Part shown: one piece after another, positions 11,701 to 64,000 of the stretch
Numbering within the stretch: the first letter of the stretch is position 1
Layout of the letters: every line of letters begins with the position of its first letter
Assembly (NCBI GenBank): GCA_965644265.1
Contig: OZ286465.1
Location: forward strand, 14,942,001-15,006,000
Direction of reading: 5' to 3'
Length of the DNA: 64,000 nt
Source: Glycera tridactyla
Taxonomy: Eukaryota
Program-made: the position numbers and the translations under genes
Notes under the pieces: model-generated
What the model was told of the DNA's origin: nothing
The model's input: only the letters and a program-made list of their open reading frames with translations
The model's database searches: none

Positions 11701-14700
11701 ATTTGAATTTCTCCATAAGTATGTTAGAAGCATTGTGATAGTGTGGACAATCCCATTACCAGTTGTTAGCATCGTGATCATGCACATTTGGCTCCATAGA
11801 GACATATTTTCCTGAATCCATATATGGATAGATGATCCCTAGCCACATGTGTTTCACCTCCCATTGAGGACCCGGAAGAAGGCAGGCTTGAATGGTGCGA
11901 CCACCAGACAAGTTGTAGCAGTTCATCGTACATGTTGTGAGGCATGCCTTTAGCCCCACTGCTGGACATCGATCTTGTCATGGAAAAGTTATGTTTGCTG
12001 AAGAATCCTCCTAGTGCTTCCGCAAAGTCATCCAGATTCTCACAAAAGTTAGGCATCTTATTTGATTGGCTTACTCTCCCACTTGTTGTAGTTTCCACTA
12101 ATGGAGACGGGGGAGTCTTATGTTAGCTGTCATTATCAAACTACATCACTGCACTGCACACTAGTCACATGTTCCCTTTGCACCCATGTCTTGGATGCCA
12201 ATTCTCTGGGAAAATGACTACAATTCAGTGATTTGCATTCTAAGAATTGTAAGACCACACAGGAATTTAGCAAAAACCTAGTAATTTCAATGATTAATTA
12301 TGCACCAGTCATCTTGAGAATTCAGACTGAATACATTCGCTGAAAATTCCATGGCATGTATCAAAAATGCTTTGATGAGACTGAAATATAATTGTCGGTG
12401 ACTTTGAATAGGGATAAGTTACACTGGGAGACATTTCTTCATCAACCATAATTGTTCATTGCAGCTGAATGAGAAGTGTAATTTGTGCATTCTGGGCAGT
12501 TGATGGAACGATATTTAGGGCTTGATATTCTCAGCATGACAGGATTCACCCTCAGACAGATCGGCAATACCGGGAGACTGTCGTTGCGACGGTCGGGTCG
12601 TCAGATTCTGAGGTACAGCAGAGCCAGCTCCAGCTCTGGCTCTTACGATTCTATCGAGGAACTTTATACGCCTTTACTAACCATTCCGCTTGCTCGCCTG
12701 GTTTTCTCTCCAGACCCGAAGAGTCCCACAGAACCCAAGGAGGATGGTGTCAGTGGCTACACGCCACGCCAAGTTGTGATCGATCCTGAAGACAAACGTA
12801 CGGATACGCCGGAGGGTGAGACCATCTTCCAGCTGAATAACAAGAATGCTGCAAAGAGTCCACGGCAGGAAGACGTATCATTCACAACTGCAAATAAGTG
12901 AGTCAATATTGTTTAGTGGTGACAAGTTTACTTTCACCAGAAAAGCTCTGAAGTAATACACCTCTAGGTATGGGAATGCAGAAATGCCAACCACTACGTT
13001 TTCTGAGTGGCAACTACTCTTTTCAGGTCAAAGTTCAGATTCTTCTTATTATTCCATTGCATCTTCTGGCGGTGCTGCTCTTTGAAATTTACACAGCTGA
13101 TATTTTTGGCCTTCAAAGGATGACATCTATGGGAATTTGAAATTTGGTGAAAAAAAACTGTGTAATTTGTTCGTGAAGTATTAAATTGTAAGAAATGAAG
13201 CACTAATATATTTATTTTTCTGCAATTTACATGTAGGAATTCACACTTATTATACTTGAGTTAGTTCATGAAATAATCCTTGAAAAGTCCTTGACATTGG
13301 GGAAGAAATACAATCCCTGTATCCTGTATTATATGTTGAACAAGTAATTCTTGTAATTTTGGGGTTGTGACTTATTTTCCTGATTAATATTTCAGGACAT
13401 CTCCCCGAACAAATGGGAATGTGATTCAGCCAGATCCAATGAGCATTCCTGGGCTGATGGGGACACCTGCGCCAACACCAGCACCAGTCGAGAGCCGACC
13501 TCCACCTGTCCCACATGCTCACATGACCCGTGCAGAGCGTAAACGACTGCAGTGGGAGCAGGAAAGAGGTGAGTCGGAAAGTAATGCATCCAAACAGAAA
13601 GCTCCTTGGCAGATAGAAAACTCAAAGTCGCAACCCACTAATCGAACTTATGCTGGAATCCATAATACTCCGTCCAATGAGGGCATGCCTAACCAGGTAC
13701 CCCCTCCCGTACCAGCTTCTCATCTGAGTAGAGCGGAGAAGAAGCGCCTGGAATGGGAGAGGGAGCGAGCAGCAGCTCAGAATCAGCATTCGGTGATGCC
13801 CTGGGAGAAAGCCCAGGAGGCATCCATGCCCACGCCTCGGGCCCCGCCCCATTCACAGCCATCCCCACCGCAGCAAGATACTCACACTAACCAACACGCC
13901 CAGCTTCCCGCTGCTCCCCTGTCTAAAGCTGAACGCAAACGCTTGGAGTGGGAGAGAGAACGCAAGATTGGTGAGTTGTCAAAGATGTTCTAGTGGCCTG
14001 TATGCATTGTAGAAGATGAAATATGAGGGCTAGATTTCTCATAATATCTTCATTACATATCTCATTTTGTTGAGATGATTGAAACTAAATCTAACCCAGA
14101 AGTTATCATCTCTGATCAGTTGAGTTCTGTCAGCTTATTGTCTGCTTTTCAGAGGTCGGGATTTTGCATGTACATGTACCGTATATTGCTGTGTATACAC
14201 CCATAGCCAATTAGACGCATCCGTCTTACTTACTTGCCAACAGCACCAGTGAAATTCACTTTCACGCTATGTCAGATGACAAAATTTATCAAACAAGTGT
14301 GGAACAAAGCCAATGATTTCAAGTGTCAATCCAAGTGAAAAGTTATCTTGACCACTGAAAGCATGTGTCAAGGTGAATAATCACAGGTTTATTGATATAA
14401 ACAGAAAGCTGGCATCTTTGAACACAGTTAACAGTGCATTGTCCTATCGAGTCACAAGTCTTGCCATGTGGTGACTACGGACATGCTGCATTTATCTTCA
14501 TTGTTCTTTCTCACCATGGTTTGATGGGGGCTAAGATTGTGGATTACTCCGATTGTTCTACCTACAGAGTCAGCTGAACAATCATCCAACATGCAAGCAC
14601 ACTGGGTTTACAAGTGTCAGGCTTTATTTGCTCACATCCAACATGCGAGCTCACCGGGTCTACAAGTGTCAGGCTTTATTTGCTCACATCCAACATGCAA

Positions 14701-17700
14701 GCACACTGGGTCTACAAGTGTCAGGCTTTATTTGCTCACATCCAAGATGCAAGCACACTGGGTCTACAAGTGTCCAGCTTTATTTGCTCACATCCAACAT
14801 GCGAGCACACTGGGTCTACAAGTGTCAGGCTTTATTTGCTCACATCCAACATGCGAGCACACTGGGTCTACAAGTGTCAGGCTTTATTTGCTCACATCCA
14901 ACATGCGAGCACACTGGGTCTACAAGTGTCAGGCTTTATTTGCTCACATCCAACATGCGAGCACACTGGGTCTACAAGTGTCAGGCTTTATTTGCTCACA
15001 TCCAACATGCGAGCTCACCGGGTCTACAAGTGTCAGGCTTTATTTGCTCACACCAAACATGCGAGCTCATCGGGTCTACAGGTGTCAGGCTTTATTTGCT
15101 CACATCCAACATGCGAGCACACTGGGTCTACAAGTGTCAGGCTTTATTTGCTCACACCAAACATGCGATCACACTGGGTCTACAAGTGTCAGGCTTTATT
15201 TGCTCACATCCAACATGCGAGCACACTGGGTCTACAAGTGTCAGGCTTTATTTGCTCACATCCAACATGCGAGCACACTGGGTCTACAAGTGTCCGGCTT
15301 TATTTGCTCACATCCAACATGCGAGCACACTGGGTCTACAAGTGTCCGGCTTTATTTGCTCACATCCAACATGCGAGCACACTGGGTCTACAAGTGTCAG
15401 GCTTTATTTGCTCACACCGAACATGCGATCACACTGGGTCTACAAGTGTCAGGCTTTATTTGCTCACATCCAACATGCGAGCACACTGGGTCTACAAGTG
15501 TCAGGCTTTATTCGCTCACATCCAACATGCGAGCACACTGGGTCTACAAGTGTCAGGTTTTATTTGCTCACATCTAACATGCGAGCACACTGGGTCTACA
15601 AGTGTCAGGCTTTATTTGCTCACATCCAACATGCGGGCTCACCAGGTCTTCAAGTGTCAGGCTTTATTTGCTCACATCAAACATGCGAGCTCACCAGGTC
15701 TACAAGTGTCAGGCTTTATTTGCTCACATCCAACATGCGAGCACACTGGGTCTACAAGTGTCAGGCTTTATTTGCTCACATCCAACATGCGATCACACTG
15801 GGTCTACAAGTGTCAGGCTCTATTTGCTCACATCCAACATGCGAGCTCACCGGGTCTACAAGTGTCCAGCTTTATTTGCTCACATCCAACATGCGAGCAC
15901 ACTGGGTCTACAAGTGTCAGGCTTTATTTGCTCACATCCAACATGCGAGCACACTGGGTCTACAAGTGTCAGGCTTTATTTGCTCACATCCAACATGCGA
16001 GCACACTGGGTCTACAAGTGTCAGGCTTTATTCGCTCACACCAGATATAGTTGTTGTTGCGTGACGGATGACAAGATATGTCAGCAGCTCATTCATCAAC
16101 ATCATTGTCTTACATTCACACATCATACAATGGATTTTCTCTCTGATTTGGTTACAGATAGGCATACATGGCACTGGCTTATGCCTTTGTGCCCTGGGTG
16201 TATATCCAGCGATATATGGCATATGTTGTATTTCATACATCTATGATAGGCTTTTAATGCTTTTGCATGAATTATTGTGAAAATTTCCGTTTGCATAAGC
16301 TCTTGTCGGCCAATTTTTCATCTTCTCAATGGTAGTACAAACACTTGCTTGCATGCGAACACAGATGTTAGATTGATGTCCATTCCTTTCACGTCAGATT
16401 TTTTTGCATGATGTGAAAAACTAAGATAAGATTCCAGACATTATATGCCTCTAATATGTGGTGTTTCTTTGGCCTGGAGATATCATCTTTTTTTCTATCA
16501 TCACTATGCCCTTGCGTAAGATGCCCTGATATTTCTTTCTTCTTTACGTTATGATCTGGCTCCATTGCATCATTTCCCATCAATTCCTTCTGGTCATTTT
16601 TCTCAACTGCTTCATGTATTTATGGTTGCTGATTCATTCACAGCATCCTAATATTCCCACAGCTATTTTGCTTGATGTGCAGCTGATGATATGCATGTTT
16701 TATGGTCTTCCACTTTTCACACGCTTCTAACTCTTCATCTTTGCTCTGTGTTGTCTCTGTATAGTTAGCCTAACACCTCCTGCAGCAAAAAATGCTTCAC
16801 CTGCTCAGAAGATTTCAATAGCCGACTCGGCACCTGGAGTTATGTTGGGTAACACAAGAGGTATTCAGAAGAAATCCAGAGGCGTCATGGCTGGAGCTAG
16901 TCAGCACAGAGACAGAGGTGCTGATAGGCGTCATTCATCTAGCCAGGAACGTACGGGATCTGTAGGAACAATCAGCTCTAGTGAGTTGAGGAAGGTGGAA
17001 GAACTCATCAGTGGCAACTATGTGAAGAGTGCTCCCCGTGAGAGGCTGGATTCAGTGGAGGGATCTGTCAATAGAGCCGCAGATATATTAGTTGTACATC
17101 ACATCCACCATGATGCAAGTCAGGTCAATGATGCCCAGATGGCTGAACAGCTGTCTCAAAGCTGGGAAACTTCTAACGGACCAGGGAGCACATGGCCCAG
17201 TGCCAAATCTGTCACATCTTTGAGAGATCGTGAGACTCTAAGCAGTCAGTCTGATAAAAAGGAACATCTTATTGAGGAAACAATTCATGCAGAAACACAA
17301 ACAGCTTGTGATGGTATAACGAAAGGAGATCTGCATGCAGTGGGATCTTCCCTAGGTCTGGAGCATGATCACAAGCAGTGGGCTGAAGATCACAATGTTG
17401 GAGGAGTTTTGCAGAGTGCGAATGCAGTGTCACGTTCTGAGATATGTACCGAGTCACCTCTGCAGAGTCGTCAGTCACTCAGTCAACGTGAGCAAAAACG
17501 CCTCCAGTGGCAGAGGGAACAAACAGAACTGAAGGAGTTAGAAAAGTGTAATGTATGGAATTTTTCCTGTAGTCCAAAACAGAGAGTAGGTCATACATGT
17601 GACCTGTCTCCAATACCTGATCATCGACTCTACACTGCCGACTCCTTACAAAGTTTAGAGAGATCACGGGATCAGTTGAAGACTGCTTCTGCACCTGCGC

Positions 17701-20700
17701 ATGTAATCATCAGTCAAACAGCCATTAATGCCAATGATGCCAAGAACATTGATGATTATGAGCCGCAACCTCCACCATCTCGTGTCAGACAAAAGCGTAT
17801 TCAGTGGAAAAGAGAACAAGAAGAATTGGAGAAGATCTGTAGAGAGTCTGAGGTCATGGATGAACTCAACAAAAGGAAGCACCCTGTTGTAACACCATTG
17901 CTTGAAAACACAGTCACATCTGGCAGAAATACAGCCATTGAGGTAATTAATTCGGGCAAAGAGAAAAGACAGGCATGGGTCAAAAGTAGCAGTGCAGGTG
18001 GTGATCAGGTTCTTGGCAAGAATTCTGCAGATCGTTTGTTATCGTCAGAGAATGTCCAGCAGCAGTCAGCAACAGGAGTAGGGCAACAAGCAGAATTAAA
18101 CAGGCAGAGCACTGCCCCCACACTCACAAAAGTAGAGAGAATGAGGAAAAGGTGGCAAGCTGAAAAGGGTAAGAGAGTGTGCTGGGTTGCAATAGTGCTG
18201 ATTCTTGTTTTTTGTTGATTATTGGTTTCTAGTTTTTCTTTTACTATTACATTGCACCTTGAACTCCTTCACTAATGTCATCCATCAGTATCCACTGTTT
18301 TCCATGGCAAATAGTATTCTTGTGTCCACCAACCACTATAGTCCACCTCATGTTTGTATTGCTTTGGTAATCTCCCAACCTGACGCACTTCCCTATTTTT
18401 GGGTAATGTGCTTTGTTTAGAATGAAAGCATTGCTATCATGCTTGAGATTCAACTCTCGTTTAAGTTATATAGTTGAATATGCCATCAATAGCTTCATTC
18501 TAGATTTATGTCATGCTTGAAAAGCACAACCTTACTGGATCCTCATCATCCTTATTCCAAGGTTTGTGTGAGTGGTTCCTGCAGAGGACTGAGCATCCAG
18601 CTTTCAAAGACCAGTAACTTATGGAAGATATGATCCTTTGGGGTGATACATGCTGTTGAATTTCAATCATTCAATCAACCAATCAGTCAACTAATTGATC
18701 AATCAATCAATGCTCCAAGGACAGATATGTTTGAGTAAGATCCCTTGGAATGGTGAAAAATTGTAGTTTAATGGAACAGCTGTTGAGAATAGCACCGGAA
18801 TTAGAGTTGCACCTTAGAGAAGCAAGCCGCCAGTGAGCAATTATCTTTTACAAGCCGGCTTCTCTCTTGCGCCCCTGGGGAGAAAACCCGATAGCACATA
18901 CTCTGGAGGAAAGGCCATACTTGCTCTGCTCTCCATTACTCATCGATCACTTTCTCAGCATTGATATTGCTCTGTATGAATTATGATATAATTATAATAT
19001 GGGACCCAGGGATCTTGCTGTACTGACCTAGTGGTGGCAATCAATACCCGCTCTGATTCATTTTGATACGACAACTACTGTTCATTGCACTGTCAATCTC
19101 TGATTGGGTCTCTGCAGGACTTTTTTGTAGCAAGGAAAGGTGGATTGAAGGAACTTTGGCCCCAATACCCCTGAATTCCAAATCATTTGGCAGGCTCTAC
19201 CCGTCTTAAATCATATAGCACATTGAAGTTTGAATGTATTTCCGTGAAGCCTACATTCTTTTAGTACTCTCCTACTCCCACATAAAAAATTCATTTTCAG
19301 CTTTTCTCCCCATTGTTATCTTGATGAAATATTCTGCAGATATTGCTATCCCTAGAGTTTCATTTATGCCTATGGTGATTTTATATTGTCCCATCATGTG
19401 CTATAGCTGTATTGTCTAGTAGTTCCAATGATCATGTACTGATTACAGATGGCAATAAATATTCTGTATTCTGTGTGAGGTTGTGCAATACCTGTGATTA
19501 TGTTTTATTGTTAAGCCATCATTTCTACTCAATTCTTGGCTTGTGGTGGACCACTGTTAACACCAGCTTGTTTCTTTTAATGATGTTTGTCACACAGACT
19601 TCCATCTCTGTCCATCTCCAGATAAATTTGTGAATGTGATCCTATTTGGATGTATTTGGTTTCAGAGTACTGCTACATCAGAACTGTTTGTGCCAGTTTG
19701 GATTTTATTCCTACAAGTGATTGTACTGCCAACATTCTGATGGCCACTAAGTAACACAATTGAAATCTGTTCATCCCATCCAGTCTGTTCATGATATTTA
19801 TCACCTTCGGAGACTGTGAAATTACTTAGTGATGAATGATGAACAAAAGGGTTATAGACAGGGCTATGCTCAAAGGCGGATGACTGAAGAAAAAAATTGA
19901 TGAGGAGCCCTGAAGCCTAGCCATCGTTGGCCATCAGAATTTGATGTAGTCTAATGTTCACGTTGTTGAACTGATGTTGAGCAGTCTGGATCAAGGTTTC
20001 AATTCATTTCCACATTACCCACTTATTGATGAATTCTCTGGTATCCCTGTTCCCTGTTACAGTCATCTAACAAGTATGAGGTGAGGCAGCTTAGGGATGA
20101 ACTATGTAAGATGCTGCACATTTTGTGCATCACTAGTGGTGCAAAACCTGCATGCTCACTTGTCGCTTGAGTGAACTATCATGAATGTTGAGGGTGTTTC
20201 TCATTGGAGGTATATATTTTATCATGCCATGAAGGGATGGATATTACCAAACGTGGTCTCCGGTCTTTGTGATATAGGTGGGCTGTTTGAAACAAGTCCT
20301 GTTGTATGAGTTCCCAGCTCCTGTTGGTTTCGATTGCATTGGTGTGACTAGAATACTCTCAGAGTTTTCACTGGCAGTGCCAGCATTTGTTTCTGTTGTG
20401 CTCAGTCTGACCTGATGGCTGATGGTTGTTTTTCGGGTTGTAGCTGAGCAGGTGGCGGAGTACGATCCATGGGGACGGCCTGGTGCGGGAGCACCCCTGC
20501 GGGACAGCACTGGGAATGTCCTCGCCGACTTCATCTCACGAAGGGTGAGTTCTGCCAGAAATGACAGCTACTTCTAGCTAGCTCAGCTTATTATCTTAAC
20601 ATTCATGCTGCATGTTTAAAAGCTTATTTATTGTTCTATTATATTGCATGTAGTATCTAGCATTCTGTACGGGATGGGGTAGTTCGCAAGAATGGTTTTT

Positions 20701-26700: not shown

Positions 26701-29700
26701 AGGAAGGTCTGCTTAATTAGGTACTTACTACATAGTTGTTTGATTTGCTGTCCAGATTGATTCAGGAACGAGGAACACATTGTCCATTAGTCACACTGTG
26801 TACCACTCATGATAAAGGAACACATTGTCCATTGGTCACACTGTGTACCACTCACGATATAGAAACACATTGTCCATTGGTCACACTGTACCACTCACGA
26901 TATAGAAACACATTGTCCATTGGTCACACTGTGTACCACTCACGATATAGAAACACATTGTCCATTGGTCACACTGTGTACCACTCACAATATAGAAATA
27001 CATTGTCCATTGGTCACACTGTGTACCACTCACGATATAGAAACACATCGTCCATTGGTCACACTGTGTACCACTCACGATATAGAAACACATCGTCCAT
27101 TGGTCACACTGTGTACCACTCACGATATAGAAACACATCGTCCATTGGTCACACTGTGTACCACTCACGATATAGAAACGCATTGTCCATTGGTCACACT
27201 GTGTACCACTCACGATATAGAAACGCATCGTCCATTGGTCACACTGTGTACCACTCACGATATAGAAACGCATCGTCCATTGGTCACACTGTGTACCACT
27301 CACGATATAGAAACACATCATCCATTGGTCAAACTGTGTACCACTCACGATATAGAAACACATTGTCCATTGGTCACACTGTGTACCACTCACGATATAG
27401 AAAAACATTGTCCATTGGTCACACTGTGTACCACTCACGATATAGAAACACATCGTCCATTGGTCACACTGTGTACCACTCACGATATAGAAACACATCG
27501 TCCATTGGTCACACTGTGTACCACTCACGATATATCATTATTGGCCATATTTGATGCTGCATAAAAGTTACAGCCTATGGTACTTCAAGTCTTTGTCACT
27601 GGCTGGAAATATGCCTTGACAAGTTCCAGCTGTGAGTCTGAATTGACACCTACTTCACTGAACAGAACTTGGTATCAAGGGTTTGTTGTGTCCGTGGCAC
27701 ATGAACGAGCTGATGACATGTGTGCTATTTGAATTTGCCTTTGATAGCATTGCCCCTTTCATTGTGGTTTGGGATCTGTGAGTGGTGCTTGTAGCTTGCA
27801 AGTTAGGCTGTAGGGCTAGAACACATGATGTACAGGTACAGTAAAACCTGCTATAGTGAAATCCTGTCTACAGTCAAAAGAAAAATCTGGCCCGAACTTT
27901 TTTTTTCACTATAATTGACCTGTATATAGTGAAATCCTGTCTACAGTGAAAAGAAAAATCTGGCCCGAACTTTTTTTTTCACTATAATTGACCTGTATAT
28001 AGTGAAATCCTGTCTACAGTGAAAAGAAAAATCTGGCCCGTGACTTTTCACTATAGACAGGTTTCACTGTACTTGATGTCTTTGCTTAGGATGTCCTCGC
28101 TTACTGGTCTACCAGCCAAACTACCAGCCAATGAATGTTACAATTGTGAACATGGATCCTATTGTAGGAGTATATTGAAAAGAAGCGTCAGTGGCAGGCC
28201 CAGCAAGCAAAGCAACAACAGATGCTTCTGCAGCAACAACAACAACAACAACAACACAGTACTAGTCCAGCCCCTGCCGCCATACGCAGCTCATTTGTTG
28301 TTGGGGTAAGTACAGTCGAACCTGTCGATAAAGACCGCCTTCTGTCGCATCAAAAAGTGGTCTTTATAGGCAGGTGGTCTTTATAGAGAGGTGGTCTTTA
28401 GTGCAGGTTCGACTGTAGATTGGCTGTGAAATGATCTTTAGAAGTCTGTCATCACCTGCAGCGTTGTGTATTGATGGGCACCTGGTCAACATGTGCAACT
28501 GGAACTTTGGTGAAGTAATTGCAGGCTGTTCTATTAGGTGCCCTGATCATTCTGCCGCTCCAAACTTTGGTGAAGTAATTGCAGGCTGTTCTATTAGGTG
28601 CCCTGATCATTCTGCCGCTCCAAACTTTGGTGAAGTAATTGCAGGCTGTTCTATTAGGTGCCATGATCATTCTGCCGCTCCAAACTTTAGTGAAGTAATT
28701 GCAGGCTGTTCTATTAGGTGCCATGATCATTCTGCCGCTCCAAACTTTAGTGAAGTAATTGCAGGCTGTTCTATTAGGTGCCATGATCATTCTGCCGCTC
28801 CAAATGCCCGGACCTCATCTACTTTATTGATATTCCGTTGCTCTGCCAACACCAGTCAGAAGTCAGGCATGGGTCTTGAGCGGAACCTCTATTTTTGATG
28901 TTCTTCACCAAACTGGCTAGAGCATGCATCTGCATGTTCAGGCAAACCAAGAGTGATCTTTGTAGACGAGTTAGACTCATCCGCTATATGTGTGATCAAA
29001 ACCAGAATGTAAGTGATCAGTGGATCAGACAGTATTTCAGTATTCTTCAAAGTGTATTTCCCAAATTTCAAGCAATTCTTGGTTTTAGAGTTTCCTTTTA
29101 ATTCAGTGGTCAATCAGAAATGTCTACATCTTAAGATACTTGAGTTGCTCCCATCATTGTGTTTGTACAGTAAAACCTGTCTTGAGAGACGCCTCTTTTG
29201 GGAGACCACCACTTTTTATTGTCACTTTTCTATTTGACATAGTCAAACATACCTCCAATGAGGGACCACCTGTGTTGAGAGACCACTTTTCATTGGCATT
29301 ATGGGCGGTCTCCCAAGACAGGTTTTACTGTATCAAGCTGTGACAGAAATTTCTGAAAATGTAATGACCTCTGGAAATCCATGTTTAACTGGTGAGTTTG
29401 AATATTGTTGAATATCATACTATATGCTTTGATGTGCAATTACTGAAATACTTTATATTAGGATAGTTTCAGGGAATTTCATCACTTTCAGTCTGGATGT
29501 GGCACCTAGATGTGGCGAATAAATGGATGTACTGTGCATGTCATCCTGGTTGGTCACCTTCATTGCCTCGTATCTTCATTGTGTCAAAAGAGTTTTCTAT
29601 TCTCTTATGTTTGCAGAATAGTGCACCTGATGAGAACAAGTTTGAGGATGCCAAGCAGCAGCAGAAGAGACTCTGGCTGGAAGACCTAGGTACGCACTCA

Positions 29701-32700
29701 CGAGCACATTTCATTGCATATGAGCACCTGGGTGCAGTCAACATTGGCAGTTAGGAACTGTGAGAAGAAGCCAATGGTTTCAGAGGAAATATCTTGTCAT
29801 AGCAGGTTCAAATTTCAAATTGGCATATATTGGTCGCAAGCATATCCACACGCAGAATGGGAATATTGCCCACTCCTCCATCCAATGTATAAACTCAACT
29901 CTCACAGGCTAATCTGACCGATAAGGTCAGTAAATTTCAGAATAAACTGGTCATCCTTGTATGGTATCCATTCGATCCTAGTTGTTTGTTTAGCATCTCT
30001 AATTCAAGAGATCTCCAACTTTACAAATCACCCGTCCTGGCATACTGGAATTTCCGCCTGCCCTACCCAACATTTCTACTTGCCCTCTTCCAGAGAATGA
30101 TTGAGTGAATCCTGGTACTAGCACAGTCTATTAGGCAGGTACACTGATCAGTCTGTCTGCCTCTTAGTGCCTGTGGGGCCCGCCTTAGTTTAAAGTCCTG
30201 GATATTACTGAAGCAAATAGAGCAATTGACACAGCTGGTCTTTATCTGTCATGATGTTTACCTTGCAGAAAGGCAGAAGGAGGAGAAGCGCTTGCAGAAG
30301 CAGCGTGAGCGTGACGAGAGGTTGAAGGAGGAGTTACACGACACGTGGGCAGACCGCTTCAAGGTGTATCAGCCAGCGCAGGTGCCGGTTCAGCAGCTGA
30401 GGCAGCCAGCCACCGCCGAGGATACCTTACCCATTGTACAGAAGGTGGAGACAGACACACGCACCATCAGCGCCCCCGCTGGCGACACCACTCCTGATGC
30501 CCATGCAGCGTGAGTTCACCAACTGGATATTTCATCAATTGGCTCTGGAGAATTTGTGCTGATTTTTCCCAAATTCTCAGGGCGTGATGAGATGGCCTCC
30601 AACCTGCCCCGTGCTGGTAGATTTCCAAGATTGGGAGGTTGATTTTGAAAAAAAAACCTGCCCGAGGGACAGGTGGAAAATGATAAATGCAATGAATATG
30701 TAACGAGGGTATGGTAAGTATTGAAAGCAGCAGCAGATAGATCTGAAATGTATCGGCCCAAAGGGGGGCAGGTGGACATTTTATTGTTGAACTTCCTTTT
30801 CAATTCTTTACAATCTGTTCTCTGCACATTTGTCACAGTGCCTTTTATATGCATATTCTCGCTTTGGACATCAAGTTGCAAGAGGTGGCAGTGGGAAAAT
30901 ATTTGCTTTTTCATGTACTTTTCCCACCTGGTTGTGTTTGTTAGAATGTCAACAATGCTTGTCAATGATATCATGGCAAATGGATGTTCTGTTTGCTAGT
31001 CTAATCTGATTTTTTGTTCAAAATTGGCATGGCACTGCCAAGAGCTGTTCATACTAGTGTCCCTAGTAGGCTAGTGATCTTTGTAGAGAGGTGGCCTTTG
31101 TGGTTATCCATCCAGCATGAAAAAACATTTTGAGAATAATTTTACAAAACGTAAACAATTTTGGAAGTTCAGAAAGCAGCTTGTAGACAACCAGAAAGCA
31201 CTTCATCAAATCCAATACAAAAATATAAAAGATGGTGACGTCCTCATGCCAAATCAGTTTCTCTCGCATTTTTCCACCCAAATTGTACCATCAGGAATGA
31301 ATTTCTTTCCGCAAATTGAATTTGGTTTAGCATTAGCCTTCTCTAATTTGCTAAAATGTTGAAGTATATCAGCAACCTTGCCTTAGAACATTTTCCTTTT
31401 CAGAAGTTCATCATTTGACTGTGTTTTATTTTCTTTATTTACATGTTCCAGCTCATTTCAGAGAGGGGTTCACATGTTTGTTGACTCAAAAACGCAACAA
31501 GAACTTGAAGAGAAGCGACGCAAGCATTTGGAACATCAGGTGAGAAAGAAGAGAGAATATATCACCTCTGCCTATTCTGTCAAATGTGACCCATTGCTTC
31601 TGTGTATAGGCAAGAGTGTTGAACCAATAATCCAGTGGTATTCCAGTTTTATTTTGTAATTTTTTTGGGTGAAAACACATTTTCTTTAGGAAATCTTTGT
31701 TGGGTGAGGTAACTGAGTAACTTTGGTGCCTACCACCACATGATCTTATTCACACATGCTCTGTTGTATTTGGGAGGGTGTTTGATCATCCATGCACCAG
31801 TAGCTAAGATTTGAGTAGGGATTTTCAGGTAAGATTGCTTCTTTTTGAGAAAATTGATTCAACAATTTGTTGAAGTCATGCTACTCTGCAAGCATGGCCC
31901 CCACCTTCCCCAGATTTCATACACACATGCTCCAGTGTATTATGAAGGGCAGCCACCCAACCATTCAGCAGCATCTCACTTTTGCATTAATGATTTTTCG
32001 GTAAAAATGTAATCTTTCATCTCAACCCTTATATGCTTCATGGCATGTGAATGTATGCACCCATCTTAGTGATTAGGGATTGATACCTTATGCGTATTTT
32101 CATTCCCTGCGATTTTATCCATCCTATTAGAGCCAGTCCGTGACAAATTTGAGATTTTGCATCAGAACTTCACTTTTTTCAAATGACTGCACTCTGACAT
32201 TTCTCTTAAGTATTCAGTACTCAGTCAAACGAATCCCAGGTACAAATGTGGTCTGTATAGATCTCATAGTATCTTGGCACTGTCCTGAATTGGTAGGAAG
32301 CCGTTCGAGCACAGGTTGAGGAGAAGGAACGACTGAAACGTGAGGCGCGTGATAAACAGAGGGCAGAGGAGCTGGAAGAAGAGAGGAAACTACAGGTGGA
32401 ACGTGATAAACTTCAGAAACAATTTGAGACGGAGCAGCACAAGTTGAAACAGAAAGAGGTGAGGATTGGAATGTGCACAGGTTACATTCTGGGGGTTGAA
32501 GCATTTCACATTCTGTCAGGTGTGAGCCCCTCTCGTAGAACATCTTGAGGCACAATGCCCTTGATCCAATGAGAGGATTGCACTTGTACTCTATTGACTG
32601 AACCCTGCTTTCGAGGTATTTGTGGAGGAATTCTTTCATCTGATCTGACCACGCAAATATACTTTTGCTTGCTGTATATGTTTTATCGCCTGTTCAAATA

Positions 32701-35700
32701 TTGAGTTTCTTATGTCTAGGTCTATATTGATGATGATATCGATCTGTCAATCACCTGGGCTTATCTTAAATTGATCCTTGATATCAAAAAGCCAGCCCGT
32801 TCTTTTCAAAGAGTGCTTGCGGATTCATGAAATGCTCATATTTTTTAGAATTCCTGTCGAAACCATGTTTGCAGGATTTGCAGAAGAGACGAGCTGATCT
32901 GCTGCAGGAGGCGCGGGATCGAGCGCGAGAGGAAGCGGAGCGTGACAAGCATCACCAGCGAATGTTGAAACTGAGGCAGGGCGGCCATGACATCTCACAT
33001 TTGCAGGCCAGCTTTGAAGGTAGGCAGCTCACAGTAGACATCAGAGATACTTGAATGTATACTCACACCATCTCTTACTAGACTAGTCCTTCAGTTCATA
33101 TAGTTTTAGAGTTATTTTTTTTTCTTGAAGATTCTTCAGGATTTACAGCCTAGATCCCTAGAAATGATTCAAACTCCCAGTGCTTCTCTTTCCCAATTAG
33201 GGTATCCAAAATATATATCACACTGATGGATGGAAATTCCAAACTCAGTTGGATCTTGTGTCATTATGAAAGATGTAAGAAAGAAGTTATCCATGTCAGG
33301 AATTGAGAATACCCTGTGCCCATCATTTTGATAGAAACCTCTTTTTTTCTGAAAAAAAAATATGGAAATTGTATGGTATTTGATTGATGATAATGGCAAA
33401 AAACCTTGATAATCTGCATATTAATTTTGGGTGCTATCTGGCATCTGCTCTGCCTTTATTCTCGACATTACTAAATGAGTGTGACTTAATGTAAACTGTC
33501 TCCAGGTGGCCTTATTCTCAGGGATATGTGAACTGTTTCTTGGGTGAAAAGGCATATCATTTTGGGACAGTGCAAATTGTCATGGTGTGACCCCCCCCCC
33601 CCCCAAAAAAAAAAAAACTTATGCAAGTCACATGCAAGACAGCAGACTTTGATGAGAAAACATGGTATAGGCTATATGTAATGTGGCACATGGGAACTGC
33701 ATCAATGTGACCATAAGACCCACACAGCTTCAATTATTTGAAAAAAATCTTGGGTTCTGCTCAATATCTTCTCCTACAGCATGTGAGGACTCCTGTCTCG
33801 TCTTTTCTGTGTTGAATGCGTGTGGATTCTGAGCAGAAGTGAGATTGTTGACATTTTCAAGTTGGGTGTCAGCCACATGTGCTGGAAGAAGATAATGGAA
33901 GTAGCTGGCTTTCACAATGATACAATGGCTGACTGTCATATGTGCAGTAAAGCTTCCATCATGCTCCCCATCTCTGAGAATCTACCCATGGTCATTTACA
34001 ACGCATGTCATTCTTGCCTCTGCATTCTCCATTTCTGCCTATCATCCATGTTTTGTCCTATTGACCACTGGTGTCAAGCATCTGAAATCTGTCCCAGTCA
34101 TGGGCAGTGGGTTTTTTCATGTGACAAATCTTCCTGTGATAAATTTTACATTGACTGTCCAGTTTCTGTTAACAACAACTAATTATATCTATGTCAATTT
34201 CATTTTTTAGTTCCAACGGGTAATTATTCTGGGACTTTTATTTCTTTGATGTTTTTATCTTGTAACTCAATAACCTGTGAGATGATCTCATTGAAGATGA
34301 TTATGATTGCATGACATATTTGTATGTTTTCTGATAGAGTTATTCTGGCAGAGTTTAGCACTTGTGCTAATCATGGGACAGTTGCCTCAGATCACTATCA
34401 CATGCCATTCTGATTTCTCTCTCTTTCCAGCTGGAGAAATCCTCATATGTTTCTGCTCTGGCTGGAGTTGGTCATGAGGGGCCATTTAGATCCTGGTTGC
34501 AAAATTGATTAGAATTATTCCTCAATTCATAAGTGCCTTCCTAGTTGTTAAGATAAAGTTTTATGGGCTTAGTTTTGGTTTCCACGTTTGAAAGCATAAA
34601 AAGAAACTGCAATAAATGACACTTTAAAATGGTCTAACGGTCTCGTTGATTAAGCCAAAGAGAGGGACTATTTTCAGGGTGGGTTTCATGGAAATTTATT
34701 GCAGACATGTCATGCAATTGGTATTGTTTCTCCGTTCAGGCTAACAATTATTACATTTATGTTTGTTCAACACCATATACATCATGTGGATGGTCAAAAC
34801 TTGTGCAATTCCACACCTGTTTCACTGTTGTTATGAGTGAAATATTTCATGCCGTACTACTTGCTTGACTTACTTTGTGGGGTGCAACTTGTACTAACAG
34901 ACATGGTCGCATGCTGGTGTCTGATCCATGATTGTCATCTGTTTGTGAAAGCTTCTCAGCCATCTGTCTGTGTGTCTGTCTGTGTGTCTGTCTGATATTT
35001 TGTGGCATGTCATTCGAGCTGGATTGGTGATTTTTTGCTGTCAAAATGGTAAGAACAATGAATGGCTTCTTCACTCAGGAGTGGGTTTCATCAATATCTA
35101 CTGCAGTTTAATGTCTATGTTTGACCATTTGTAGACCCCTGCTGTCAAAATACTTATGTCTAGGCTTGAAATACACCAATATCCCCCAGTTTTAAGCAGG
35201 TTAGAGTGTATTTATAGCTGTCTGATGACATTTTATAGGCCTGAAAAAGATCGTTTTTTACCTGTCAAACTCGCGAGTAGTGCCAGTTTATGTGCTGACA
35301 ATCACCTATAAGTTTGTAAACTGCATCCACATGAATCATTTCCCCACAAAACCACCCATTACTTGCAGTTTTGAGCAGAATTGAGCATGATTTTAGCTGT
35401 AATACTGTATTTTCAAGCACTGAAAAATATCGTTTTTACCTGTCAAACTTGGGAGTAGTGAAATGTGAACATGCTAACAATAAACTCTATGTTTATGAAC
35501 TGCTTACAAATGAAATGTTTCCCAACAAAAACACCCATAACTCATAGCTTTGAACAAAAATAAGCATGTTTGTAGGTCCCAGACTCCATTTTCTAGCCCT
35601 GGAAAATACCTGTTTTTCTTGTCAAACTCAATCACAGACAATTTATCTACTTCCTGTTTGTAAAATGCTCACAAAATTATACAGTTTCCTGCAGAACCAT

Positions 35701-60757: not shown

Positions 60758-63036
60758 CATACAGGGCTGCCCTTTGGAGAGGCGAGCTTTTTGATTCACC
60801 AGACACTTCGCAGGCCTATCTAGTTCTACTGAGAACAACAATGTTTGCTCCATTGAGTTGTCTCCATTGTCGTACAAATCGTATGTCGGGATTCCAGTTT
60901 GCATAAGATGCATTCCCTGTTTGCTAGATGTAGTTTGCCAGGCCCTATTTCGATTGATATACATGCGTCAGGTCAGAAATGACTGGGGGGAGAGAGAGTG
61001 CAAGCTCGAGCATCACCGGCGGGAGTCGGCGAGTGTGTGCAGTCGGGCGTGACTCCCGAATCTGACACTCAGGAGGCAGTTGCCCTGCTCGGGAGCATCT
61101 CCCAAGAGGGGCTCCTTTTAGATATAGATTATTAATTGTGTCACATGGTATTTTGAGTAACCAATAGGGTTTAGGTTCGGATTCTGCCCAGAGCAATGAT
61201 AGAGAGGTGTGGAGGCTGCTGGGATAGCAAAACCCCTTTTAAAAGGGCAAGGTTTTTGAAGGATTAAAGCACTTCGCCGTTGGGGTCAGGAGAGACTCCA
61301 CTACAGCAGCAGCAGACCTCTACACACCTCTACAGCTCTGGGCTCTAATAATCATCTGTACTTGCACACTGGTTTATGCCCAATAAATGGATACACGTTA
61401 CTGGGATGCTGCCTTTGAGTATTCCCCTACTAGGATCCCGAAGTCGGGCCACCCAGGCCTGATACATGGGTTCCCTGGTTCTCTATCCACTCAAATTCAG
61501 TGGTAAAATGTCAAGTTGTTAATCCTTGTCAGTAGTACTCATCTCGCAGTTTTCGTATCGGTGCCGGTAGTGATTTTGTTGAGTTGGGTGCCTTGCTTAT
61601 GGCGTGGTCCCACTGCGGTCAAGTTCGTTTCCGTGGGAGGAAAGTCAAAAATTCATTACGAAAATGTGCTGTCAACCGCCGTCAGTGTCCGTCAAATCGC
61701 AGTCTCCACATTTCTTTCGTCGTTTTTTTTGCGTAGGATTGGGATTGATGGCGTGAAGCGCGGACATTCATGGACATAAGCGGTCATTTCAGGANNNNNN
61801 NNNNNNNNNNNNNNNNNNNNNNNNNNNNNNNNNNNNNNNNNNNNNNNNNNNNNNNNNNNNNNNNNNNNNNNNNNNNNNNNNNNNNNNNNNNNNNNNNNNN
61901 NNNNNNNNNNNNNNNNNNNNNNNNNNNNNNNNNNNNNNNNNNNNNNNNCAACCACCTATCCAACCTCCCTACCAACCAACCAACCGACCAAGCAACCAAC
62001 CACGCACCCAACCAACCAACCAACCAATCCTCCCACAAACCAACCAGCCTCCCCACCAACCAACCAACCACCTGGCCAACCAATCTTCCAACAAACCATC
62101 AACCCAACCAACCAACAAACCATTCTACCTACAAACCAACCAACCAACCAACAAAACTTCCCACCAACCAGCCAACCTCACCACCAACCAACCAACCTCA
62201 CCACCAACCAACCAGCCTTTCCAGCAACGACCCAACCAACGAACGAACCTTTCAACCAACCAACCAACCTTCCCACCAACCAACTAACCAACCAACCAAC
62301 CAACCACTCACCCACCCACCCACCCACCCACTCACCCAACCAACCAACTAACCACCCAATCAACCAACATTCCGACCACCAGCCAACCTCCCCACCAACC
62401 AACCAACCTCCCCCCCCCACCAACCAACCCACCAACAAACCTTTAAATCAACCAACCAATGTTCCCACCAACCAACTTATCAACCACTCAACCAACCAAC
62501 CACCTATCCAACAAAACATACAGGGCTGCCCTTTGGAGAGGCGAGCTTTTTGATTCACCGGACACTTCGCAGGCCTATCTAGTTCTACTGAGAACAACAA
62601 TGTTTGCTCCATTGAGTTGTCTCCATTGTCGAACAAATCGTATGTCGGGATTCCAGTTTGCATAAGATGCATTCCCTGTTTGCTAGATGTAGTTTGCCAG
62701 GCCCTATTTCGATTGATATACATGGGTTTCCTGGTTCTCTATCCACTCAAATTCAGTGGTAAAATGTCAAGTTGTTAATCCTTGTCAGTATTACTCATCT
62801 CGCAATTTACGTATTGGTGCCTTTAGTGATTTTGTTGAGTTGGGTGCCTTGCTTATGGCGTGGTCCCACTGCGGTCAAATTCGTTTCCGTGGGAGGAAAG
62901 TCAAGAATTCATCATGAAAATGTGCCGTCAACCGCCGTCAGTGTCCGTCAAATCACAGTCTTCACATTTCTTTCGTCGTATTTTTTCTGCGTAGGATTAG
63001 GATTGACGGCGTGAAGCGTGGCCATTCGTGGACGTG
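60758..63036. repeat. Tandem duplication: 60758-60965 + 61469-61794 corresponds to 62517-63036
   Basis: Direct sequence match (cagggctgccctttggagaggcgag...; ggttYcctggttctctatccactc...); each copy is followed by an N gap and a CCAA array. Confidence 0.9.
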
Positions 63037-64000
63037 NNNNNNNNNNNNNNNNNNNNNNNNNNNNNNNNNNNNNNNNNNNNNNNNNNNNNNNNNNNNNNNN
63101 NNNNNNNNNNNNNNNNNNNNNNNNNNNNNNNNNNNNNNNNNNNNNNNNNNNNNNNNNNNNNNNNNNNNNNNNNNNNNNNNNNNNNNNNNNNTCCAACCAC
63201 CTAACCAACCTCCCTACCAACCAACCAACCGACCAAGCAACCAACCACGCACCCAACCAACCAACCAACCAACCAATCCTCCCACAAACCAACCAGCCTC
63301 CTCACCAACCAACCAACCACCCGGCCAACCAATCTTCCAACAAACCAACAACCCAACCAACCAACCAACCATTCTCCCCACAAACCAACCAACCAACCAA
63401 CAAAACTTCCCACCAACCAGCCAACCTCCCCACCAACCAACCAACCTCCCCACCAACCAACCAACCAACCTTCCCACCAACGACCCAACCAACAGACGAA
63501 CCTTTCAACTAACCAAACAACCTTCCCACCAACCAACTAACCACCCAATCAACCAACATTCCGACCACCAGCCAACCTCCCCACCAACCAACAAACCTCC
63601 CCACCAACCAACCAACCAACCAACCAACAAACCTTTCAACCAACCAACCAACGTTCCCACCAATCAACTTATCAACCAATCAACCAACCAACCAACCAAC
63701 CACCCACCCACCTGCCCAACCAACCAACCAACCAACTAACAAACCACCCAATCAACCAACCTTCCGACCACCAACCAACACACAGCCGACCAACCAACCA
63801 TCTCCCCACCAACTGAACAACCTCTCAGCCAACTAATCACCCAACCGACCAAACGACTTCCCCCAACCAACTAACCAACCAACCAACTTTCTCACCAACC
63901 AACCTCCTCACCAACCAACCTCCCAACCATCCAACTGACCACCCACCCACCCACTCAAGCAACTACCCACCAAACCTACCAAAAACCAAACTATCAACTG
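61949..64000. repeat. Degenerate (CCAA)n arrays (61949-62516 and 63192-64000)
   Basis: Directly visible; the two arrays share variant patterns. Confidence 0.95.

What the first reader, a model, noticed from the sequence alone, without database searches (positions are those of the whole stretch)
13396..20544. CCDC66 with a six-copy Trp-helix module array, half of it on a skippable 1.4-kb exon
Seen: six related motifs - HMTRAERKRLQWEQER, HLSRAEKKRLEWERER and PLSKAERKRLEWERER in exon 13396-13970; SLSQREQKRLQWQREQ, SRVRQKRIQWKREQ and TLTKVERMRKRWQAEK in exon 16765-18168. Copies 1 and 2 are followed 10-12 residues later by PW, and copy 4 by VW. The 1404-nt exon is phase 1-1. Both it and the preceding exon end in a module just before the donor, so either one splices onto AEQVAEYDPWGRPG and rebuilds a full helix+PW unit. 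Recalled: human CCDC66 (about 950 aa) has one similar stretch (EAKKAQWRKEL...NDPW); this protein is about 1660 aa. Inference: alternative splicing could switch between 3 and 6 copies of a microtubule- or partner-binding unit in a ciliary/satellite scaffold.
Basis: partly seen in the sequence, partly recalled or inferred. Interest (0 to 1): 0.7.

Follow-up and report, generated by a model that had tools for sequence, protein, structure and literature searches.

The report
Expanded Trp-helix array in worm CCDC66
This cilium/centrosome scaffold gene (CCDC66) carries six copies of a short tryptophan-containing helix that most relatives have once or twice; half of them lie on a large exon that is expressed and could be skipped without breaking the reading frame, but skipping itself could not be tested.

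Summary
The recurrence is far beyond chance (0 of 20,000 shuffles).

The gene is CCDC66: Pfam PF15236 is split colinearly over three downstream exons, and orthologs align along the window.

The motif is the first half of an ancient unit that I found described nowhere. It is a basic Trp helix, then a phase-1 intron four codons after the W, then a (Y)DPWGRPGAGAP box. Vertebrates and a hemichordate have one helix, bivalves and the annelid Owenia two, other relatives three to about eight, and this gene six.

An RNA contig from one public run joins 18168 to 20444, so the big exon is expressed and spliced to the box exon. The skip 13970>20444 could not be tested.

NCBI isoforms in three bivalves remove a segment that ends exactly in their upstream helix, which is a precedent for tuning copy number by splicing. 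A perfect in-phase donor (GAG|GTGAGT, 13568) also sits just after copy 1.

No function is known for the unit. I rate this a new variant of a known kind, of moderate interest.

The parts
13396..13970 (+). Exon A (575 nt; enters in phase 2, leaves in phase 1). It encodes helix copies 1-3 separated by Pro/Gln/Ser-rich linkers.
   Evidence: Splice sites. Orthologs align here. The big HMMER search with this exon finds CCDC66 relatives.
13520..13567 (+). Copy 1, HMTRAERKRLQWEQER. PW follows at 13604-13609.
   Evidence: 32 bits
13569..13574 (+). Internal GTGAGT (GAG|GTGAGT; last exon base would be 13568). It is in phase 1, four codons after the W of copy 1, which is the position and phase of the ancestral helix|box intron. 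Its use is untested.
   Evidence: same position in Owenia, L005, L006, L007, L001 and Mizuhopecten
13721..13768 (+). Copy 2, HLSRAEKKRLEWERER. PW follows at 13799-13804.
   Evidence: AlphaFold2 helix with pLDDT about 92
13916..13963 (+). Copy 3, PLSKAERKRLEWERER. The exon ends two codons later (donor TTG|GTGAGT at 13970, W+6, phase 1).
14583..16040 (.). Intronic minisatellite, 52 nt x 28 copies, 94% matches. It is open in all three frames but is not coding, and it blocked read laying across the A-B intron.
16765..18168 (+). Exon B (1404 nt, phase 1-1). It has a Ser-rich, poorly conserved first half and helix copies 4-6 in the second half. It is expressed and spliced to exon C.
   Evidence: contigs at 17637-17867 and at 18012-18167 joined to 20443-20545. 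No ortholog aligns to it and the word search was blank.
17475..17522 (+). Copy 4, SLSQREQKRLQWQREQ. VW follows at 17553-17558.
17778..17819 (+). Copy 5, SRVRQKRIQWKREQ. No W follows.
18120..18167 (+). Copy 6, TLTKVERMRKRWQAEK, the most divergent copy. The donor AGG|GTAAGA at 18168 lies at W+4, phase 1, which is the ancestral boundary.
20444..20544 (+). Exon C (101 nt). It starts the conserved box, (A)EQVAEYDPWGRPGAGAPLRDSTGNVLADF; PWGRPGAGAP itself is 20467-20496.
   Evidence: 52.7 bits to the ortholog unit profile; junction in RNA contig
31462..31539 (+). Exon holding CCDC66 domain profile positions 29-58.
32297..32458 (+). Exon holding CCDC66 domain profile positions 60-112.
32875..33019 (+). 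Exon holding CCDC66 domain profile positions 113-153.

Best explanation
This is the CCDC66 gene of a lophotrochozoan-type marine worm.

Its N-terminal, largely disordered arm carries a lineage-specific amplification of an ancient two-part unit:
- a basic amphipathic helix centred on an invariant Trp, ..[LM]-[ST]-x-A-E-[KR]-K-[KR]-L-[QE]-W-E-x-E-R;
- then, across a conserved phase-1 intron four codons after the Trp, the box (Y)DPWGRPGAGAP[LI]R..SG.V.AD[YF].

Helix-bearing sequence was duplicated repeatedly upstream of that intron. Exon A now holds three well-conserved copies, two of them with their own PW tail. The next exon (B) is a fast-evolving, 1404-nt, phase 1-1 exon that holds three more divergent copies and ends at the ancestral boundary.

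Every exon that ends in a helix leaves in phase 1, so any of them can be joined to the box exon. This is a consequence of how the array grew.

Shown: exon B is a real, expressed exon spliced to the box exon.

Inferred: the helices act as a multivalent set of short partner-binding sites, with tubulin/microtubules or a centrosome/cilium partner as the likeliest targets. Copy number is set mainly by evolution (1 to about 8 between lineages) and possibly, in addition, by splicing.
For: Gene identity:
- PF15236 is split colinearly over three exons.
- Orthologs from Owenia, bivalves, Patella and Tubulanus align from 5630 to 46518.

The repeat is real and selected:
- The shuffle test gives a very large margin.
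- A 19-copy alignment has W invariant and E+3 nearly invariant.
- Copies 2 and 3 share 13 of 16 residues, and 9 of those 13 use different codons.

The unit is ancient:
- Bivalves, Patella, Tubulanus and Owenia have helix + PWGRPGAGAP, and Ptychodera has helix + WDPFGKAGAGAP.
- Vertebrates keep one helix; the mammalian sequences keep WNNPW or WNDSW after it.

The phase-1 boundary at W+4 or W+5 recurs:
- Owenia, Mizuhopecten, L005, L006 and L007, and window copy 6.

Copy number varies:
- 2 in Owenia and bivalves, 3 in L005, 3 helices plus 2 boxes in L007, and about 8 in one ORF in P0001/L001.

Expression:
- One contig joins 18167/8 to 20443/4 across GT..AG, and another lies inside exon B.

Helix prediction:
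- AlphaFold2 gives pLDDT about 92 for copy 2 and 75-87 for the canonical unit, with a non-helical box.
Against: - No experiment or structure says what the unit binds.
- The human N-terminal fragment 1-408 was used as a non-binding control for CEP104, CSPP1, PCM1 and CEP290.
- Copies 4-6 are degenerate, and 4 of the 6 listed differences between the RNA contigs and the window in exon B change the residue. Half of the array may therefore be under weak constraint.
- Run X1 is labelled RNA only by a guess. The spliced contig is what shows it holds RNA, and it is 90-97% like the window, so it may come from a relative or another haplotype.
Confidence: 0.75

Rival explanations
1. One reading: exon B is a regulated cassette. 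Tissue- or stage-specific skipping (13970>20444) switches the protein between 3 and 6 helices, and each form ends in a rebuilt helix + PWGRPG unit.
For: - The exon is 1404 nt and phase 1-1, and both joins give Ala and stay in frame.
- Exon B is absent from the short helix-to-box introns of relatives: about 470 nt in L005, about 400 in Owenia and 215-265 in bivalves. The A>C join would therefore recreate their architecture.
- NCBI isoforms of C. gigas (X10, X16), Mizuhopecten (X5) and Pecten (X6) each lack a segment that ends exactly in the upstream helix.
Against: - No skip junction was seen. The only junction recovered shows inclusion.
- Phase symmetry is expected for any exon born in or next to a phase-1 intron.
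- Exon B has strong splice sites.
- The bivalve events remove the upstream helix exon, not the exon next to the box, and their RNA support was not checked here.
Confidence: 0.3
2. A nested-donor dial. Three phase-1 donors lie just after helices 1, 3 and 6 (13568, 13970, 18168). All can use the acceptor at 20444, giving forms with 1, 3 or 6 helices, each capped by the box.
For: - GAG|GTGAGT at 13568 is a perfect consensus donor at the ancestral W+4 phase-1 position.
- In the relative P0001/L001, all three GTRAGT hexamers of the 1836-nt ORF are in phase 1 at W+4 after helices 1, 3 and 8. A fourth R-G-E site uses GGC GAA instead.
- C. gigas isoform X10 is made by an internal donor (AAAG|GTACAA) in the same phase as the exon's normal donor, and it removes the helix.
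Against: - R-G-E after the helix is conserved as protein even across a real intron in Owenia. GGTGAG may therefore be a relic of the old exon junction rather than a working site.
- The sequence after 13568 is clearly coding: the PW sits at the conserved spacing, and the ORF is continuous in the relative L005.
- There are no reads.
Confidence: 0.15
3. Neutral repeat drift. Only the canonical helix + box unit is functional, and the extra copies are tolerated slippage or duplication products in a disordered arm, with no role of their own.
For: - Copy number is very labile between lineages.
- The upstream helix of bivalves has lost its Trp.
- Copies 4-6 are degenerate, and exon B changes residues quickly.
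Against: - Copies 1-3 keep the peptide while their codons have diverged.
- Extra copies in four separate relatives keep the same invariant W and E.
- Two extra copies also keep a PW at the conserved spacing.
Confidence: 0.2

Closest known systems
Vertebrate CCDC66 (PF15236 family; ciliary tip module and centriolar satellite protein)
   Same: - Same gene family and overall order of conserved blocks.
- One N-terminal helix..EAKKAQW[RK]KELDEQVALKKK.., is homologous through the hemichordate intermediate.
   Different: - Vertebrates have one copy, and the GRPGAGAP part of the box is lost.
- This gene has six helices and a full box, and is about 1.7 times longer.
- No role has been assigned to that stretch in the vertebrate literature I could read.
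Owenia fusiformis CCDC66 (CAH1785208.1 / A0A8J1T4P6)
   Same: - Best overall match to the window.
- Two helices, each ending an exon in phase 1 at W+4 or W+5.
- The second lies on a phase 1-1 exon just before the box exon, the same layout as exon A (up to 13568), exon B and exon C here.
   Different: - Two copies, not six.
- Its 1-1 exon is about 255 nt, against 1404 nt here.
- There is no read-through of the first helix donor.
Bivalve CCDC66 isoform sets in RefSeq (Magallana gigas, Mizuhopecten yessoensis, Pecten maximus; named 'trichohyalin-like' or 'ZC3H13')
   Same: Helix number is changed by splicing in the annotation: the deleted pieces (129-188 aa) all end in the upstream helix.
   Different: - The switch is between 2 helices and 1.
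- The upstream helix has lost its Trp.
- The boundary there is phase 2, 10-12 residues after the Trp position.
- These are pipeline models whose read support I did not check.
Tau/MAP2/MAP4 microtubule-binding repeats with 3R/4R splicing (from general knowledge, not tested here)
   Same: Works-like analogy only: short repeated binding modules in a disordered microtubule-associated protein, whose number is changed by a cassette exon.
   Different: - No sequence relation; no Pfam model matches exons A-C.
- Microtubule binding by this unit is not shown.

Membership tests
CCDC66 (Pfam PF15236) | CCDC66 coiled-coil domain | tested here: met
   Three consecutive + strand exons match profile positions 29-58, 60-112 and 113-153, at 18.9, 25.7 and 17.8 bits. 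Each piece alone is under the 29.9-bit cut-off, but they are colinear and sum to about 62 bits. Joined scoring was not done.
CCDC66 (Pfam PF15236) | Colinear similarity to accepted orthologs outside the domain | tested here: met
   tblastn of Owenia, bivalve, Patella and Tubulanus proteins, all of which carry PF15236, hits 8-9 ordered blocks from 5630 to 46518.
CCDC66 (Pfam PF15236) | Localisation to cilia, centrosomes or satellites, and microtubule binding | not testable with these tools
   Known for the human protein only.
Tandem peptide-module array | Recurrence beyond composition | tested here: met
   3 + 3 matches against at most 1 in 20,000 shuffles of each exon.
Tandem peptide-module array | Same module in orthologs, with conserved key residues | tested here: met
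   The HMMER search finds only CCDC66-type proteins with 1-8 copies. W is invariant and E+3 nearly invariant in 19 copies.
Tandem peptide-module array | The module forms a helix | tested here: met
   AlphaFold2 predicts helix 9-27 of the copy-2 module with pLDDT about 92, and helix 17-38 of the canonical unit with pLDDT 75-87. This is prediction only.
Alternatively spliced cassette exon | Length a multiple of 3, with canonical splice sites | tested here: met
   1404 nt, phase 1-1..tgtatag|TTA and AGG|gtaaga.
Alternatively spliced cassette exon | RNA with the exon included | tested here: met
   One contig joins 18167/8>20443/4 and another lies at 17637-17867 in run X1. The run is 90-97% like the window.
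Alternatively spliced cassette exon | RNA with the exon skipped (13970>20444) | not testable with these tools
   - Only one run holds the stretch.
- The minisatellite stopped laying across exon A.
- Among the loose ends shown, none is at 20444, but 15 were not shown.

The most novel reading that the evidence does not exclude
The array is a splice-encoded valency dial. Phase-1 donors kept right after helices 1, 3 and 6 (13568, 13970, 18168) all feed the single acceptor of the PWGRPGAGAP exon. One gene would then make scaffolds with 1, 3 or 6 partner-binding helices, each capped by the same box. The same logic (internal in-phase donors after helices) is kept in a distant relative (P0001) and is used in oyster isoform X10.
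Probability: 0.15. Interest if true: 0.65.

Novelty: new variant of a known kind. Interest (0 to 1): 0.42.

Why it matters
CCDC66 is a ciliopathy-linked scaffold of the ciliary tip module and centriolar satellites, and the job of its N-terminal half is unknown.

- This work defines a conserved unit there: a Trp helix, a phase-1 intron, then the PWGRPGAGAP box. It is shared from hemichordates and vertebrates to annelids and molluscs. It has no Pfam model and no solved structure, and none of the papers I could search mentions it.
- Lineages have multiplied the unit 1 to about 8 times, and annotated bivalve isoforms remove one copy.
- That gives CCDC66 researchers a concrete peptide to test for binding to tubulin, CEP104, CSPP1 or PCM1, and a natural copy-number series to test valency.
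- If copy number is also set by splicing, it would be a tidy example of tuning scaffold valency at the RNA level.

Tried and rejected
- Word search with exon B found nothing. It is length-limited, so this says little.
- Word search with Owenia residues 235-400 found only the query itself.
- Pfam on exons A, B and C and on P0001 gave only sub-threshold noise.
- A PDB profile search with the unit gave only a chance match at E = 7.
The A>B and A>C junctions were therefore never examined.
- The three-frame-open stretch 14537-16246 was considered as a hidden exon and rejected: it is a 52-nt x 28 tandem repeat.
- A Trp-cage-like fold-back of the box on the helix was considered. AlphaFold2 gives no compact fold (pTM 0.28), so the idea was dropped and no fold search was run.
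- A CSPP1 relation was considered. The whole-library HMMER search with exon A returned only CCDC66-type hits. I had no CSPP1 sequence to compare directly.
- Tubulanus locus look-up: not on record.
The one exception was a screen print that placed the exon C residues after a bar, for inspection only.
- Runs of N were left untouched.
Full report
**1. The observation**

- copies 1-3 at 13520, 13721 and 13916;
- copies 4-6 at 17475, 17778 and 18120;
- AEQVAEYDPWGRPG at the start of 20444-20544.

The three exons have good acceptors and GTRAGN donors, and are 575, 1404 and 101 nt long. Exons A and B both end with a spare G and exon C begins with CT. Either join therefore makes GCT (Ala) and keeps the frame, and the 1404-nt exon is phase 1-1.

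PW follows copies 1 and 2 after 12 and 10 residues, and VW follows copy 4 after 10.

The recurrence is not a composition effect. Three matches per exon compare with at most one in 20,000 shuffles. A stricter pattern hits only these sites in all six frames of the window.

Copies 2 and 3 share 13 of 16 residues, and 9 of those are written with different codons. The duplications are therefore old and the peptide is under selection.

**2. The gene**

Pfam's CCDC66 domain is split colinearly over three downstream exons (profile positions 29-58, 60-112 and 113-153).

Proteins from Owenia, four bivalves, Patella and Tubulanus all carry PF15236. They align in order from 5630 to 46518.

Earlier notes of this scan call the animal a marine worm. 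The annelid Owenia gives my best summed score. I did not identify the species.

**3. What the motif is**

A whole-library HMMER search with exon A gave five hits. One is the full-length Owenia CCDC66. The other four are exon-sized predictions. For three of them (P0003-P0005; loci L005-L007) the locus shows a PWGRPG-type exon just downstream. No such exon was found in the 4 kb held downstream of P0001.

A profile of the copies, applied to the orthologs, shows that the motif is the first half of a conserved unit:
- the helix, ..[LM][ST]xAE[KR]K[KR]L[QE]WExER;
- 8-14 residues;
- (Y)DPWGRPGAGAP[LI]R..SG.V.AD[YF].

The hemichordate Ptychodera has the helix followed by ELDEQVALKKK and then WDPFGKAGAGAP. 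Vertebrates keep ..EAKKAQW[RK]KELDEQVALKKK.., with WNNPW or WNDSW after it in the mammalian sequences.

AlphaFold2 predicts a confident helix over the motif (pLDDT about 92 for copy 2 and 75-87 in the canonical unit). It predicts an extended, non-helical box and no compact fold.

I found no description of the unit. No Pfam model covers it. No PDB chain resembles it. None of four full-text searches, nor the five CCDC66 papers I opened, mentions it.

**4. The intron logic**

A phase-1 intron separates helix and box four codons after the Trp in these cases:

| Gene or locus | Helix | Donor |
|---|---|---|
| Owenia | helix 1 | GAG\|GTAAGA |
| Owenia | helix 2 (W+5) | AAC\|GTAAGA |
| Mizuhopecten | canonical helix | C\|GTATGT |
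| L005 | third helix | A\|GTATGT |
| L006 | single helix | GAG\|GTGTGT |
| L007 | two helices | GAG\|GTAGGT, GAG\|GTGAGG |
| Window | copy 6 | AGG\|GTAAGA at 18168 |

Window copy 3 ends two codons later (W+6, 13970).

Copy 1 carries a perfect GAG|GTGAGT at 13568, at exactly the ancestral position and phase, but the reading frame runs on through it.

In P0001's 1836-nt single ORF, the only three GTRAGT hexamers are all in phase 1 at W+4, after helices 1, 3 and 8.

Any exon ending in a helix at this boundary can be joined to the box exon.

By position, exon B corresponds to Owenia's phase 1-1 exon that carries helix 2, and to the long low-complexity exon that carries the canonical helix in bivalves. 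No sequence similarity to either remains.

**5. Copy number between lineages**

| Lineage or locus | Helix copies |
|---|---|
| Vertebrates, hemichordate, Patella, Tubulanus, L006 | 1 found with my profiles |
| Bivalves | 2 (upstream one has lost its Trp) |
| Owenia | 2 |
| L005 | 3 |
| L007 | 3 helices plus 2 boxes |
| This window | 6 |
| P0001 | about 8 |

In the window, copies 1-3 form one subfamily (AE[RK]KRL[QE]WE[QR]ER). Copies 4-5 form another (QKR[LI]QW[QK]REQ). Copy 6 is the most divergent.

**6. RNA**

Only one public run holds part of the stretch. It is kept as contigs and is labelled RNA by a guess.

On 16300-20700, one 343-nt contig covers 18012-18167 and jumps across GT..AG to 20443-20545. 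It then runs on for 84 letters that lie beyond the stretch, as expected if it continues into the next exon. A second contig lies at 17637-17867.

Exon B is therefore transcribed and spliced to exon C. The contigs are 90-97% like the window, so they may come from a relative or another haplotype. Of the six listed differences in exon B, four change the residue, while both differences in exon C are silent. The sample is small, but it fits a fast-evolving exon B.

The junctions 13970>16765 and 13970>20444 could not be examined.

**7. Precedent for splicing that changes helix number**

NCBI isoform sets show deletions that all end exactly in the upstream helix (..WKHMT.xERRRLM.AR..):
- C. gigas X10: residues 273-401;
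- C. gigas X16: residues 214-401;
- Mizuhopecten X5: residues 210-390;
- Pecten X6: residues 210-383.

The scallop event is a 546-nt cassette skip. Oyster X10 uses an internal donor, AAAG|GTACAA, in the same phase as the exon's normal donor.

These are pipeline models whose read support I did not check. They still make splicing control of helix number plausible in this family.

**8. Function**

Nothing is known.
- Human fragment 1-408, which holds the single helix, did not pull down CEP104, CSPP1, PCM1 or CEP290.
- Fragment 1-570 localises to microtubules in cells, and the authors state that the role of the N-terminal region is open.
- CCDC66 binds the microtubule lattice and recruits CEP104 through CEP104's jelly-roll domain.

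My working model is inference. The helices are short, Trp-anchored binding sites in a disordered arm. More copies would give more avidity for one partner, with tubulin/microtubules or a satellite/tip-module protein as the first candidates.

**9. Verdict**

- The naming is right.
- 'Skippable' is true only in the sense of frame.
- 'Switchable' is untested: about 0.3 for exon-B skipping and about 0.15 for the nested-donor version.

The real gain is the definition of an ancient, undescribed helix|intron|box unit in a ciliopathy gene, together with its lineage-specific multiplication.

I rate this a new variant of a known kind, of moderate interest.

Noticed in passing
window 14583-16040: A 52-nt minisatellite (28 copies, 94% matches) lies in the intron between the two motif exons. 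It is free of stop codons in all three + frames for about 1.5 kb, so ORF lists show three overlapping 350-500-aa 'ORFs' that are not genes.
   Followed up: yes
window 26774-27534, 28503-28804, 45793-46422: Further intronic minisatellites of the same gene (45 nt x 17, 60 nt x 5, 41 nt x 16). The last one ends about 20 nt into the tblastn match of a conserved C-terminal exon (46402-46518).
   Followed up: partly
window 18358-18798: A stretch of the intron between exons B and C attracts many unrelated contigs of run X1 (summed word depth up to about 80, all only partly fitting). It is probably a high-copy repeat or mobile-element fragment.
   Followed up: no
window 13569-13715: The perfect donor at 13568 could also pair with a phase-compatible acceptor (ccctcccgtaccag|C at 13716). 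That would define a 147-nt in-frame 'exitron' that removes the PW tail of copy 1. The Pro codons before each helix double as polypyrimidine tracts.
   Followed up: partly
window 12535-12897: The exon upstream of exon A is 363 nt, appears to be phase 2-2 (also frame-neutral), and matches no ortholog. It may be another fast-evolving or optional exon.
   Followed up: no
window 61949-62502 and 63193-63982: Long imperfect CAAC/CCAA tetranucleotide arrays give PTNQ-type pseudo-ORFs and a strong negative GC skew at the end of the window.
   Followed up: no
L007 10262-13254: In one relative the whole two-exon unit is duplicated: helix, helix | EYNPWGRPGPG.. and then helix | EYFPYGRPGGGAP... The box can therefore be multiplied as well as the helix. 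An IFT46-like gene lies upstream on the other strand.
   Followed up: partly
L001 1644-3479 (P0001): About eight helix copies lie in one uninterrupted 1836-nt ORF. All three GTRAGT hexamers of that ORF sit in phase 1, four codons after a helix Trp.
   Followed up: yes
RefSeq names of bivalve orthologs (P0007, P0009, P0011, P0014, P0126): Bivalve CCDC66 orthologs are named 'trichohyalin-like' or 'zinc finger CCCH domain-containing protein 13' by the annotation pipeline, although they carry PF15236. The names are misleading.
   Followed up: yes
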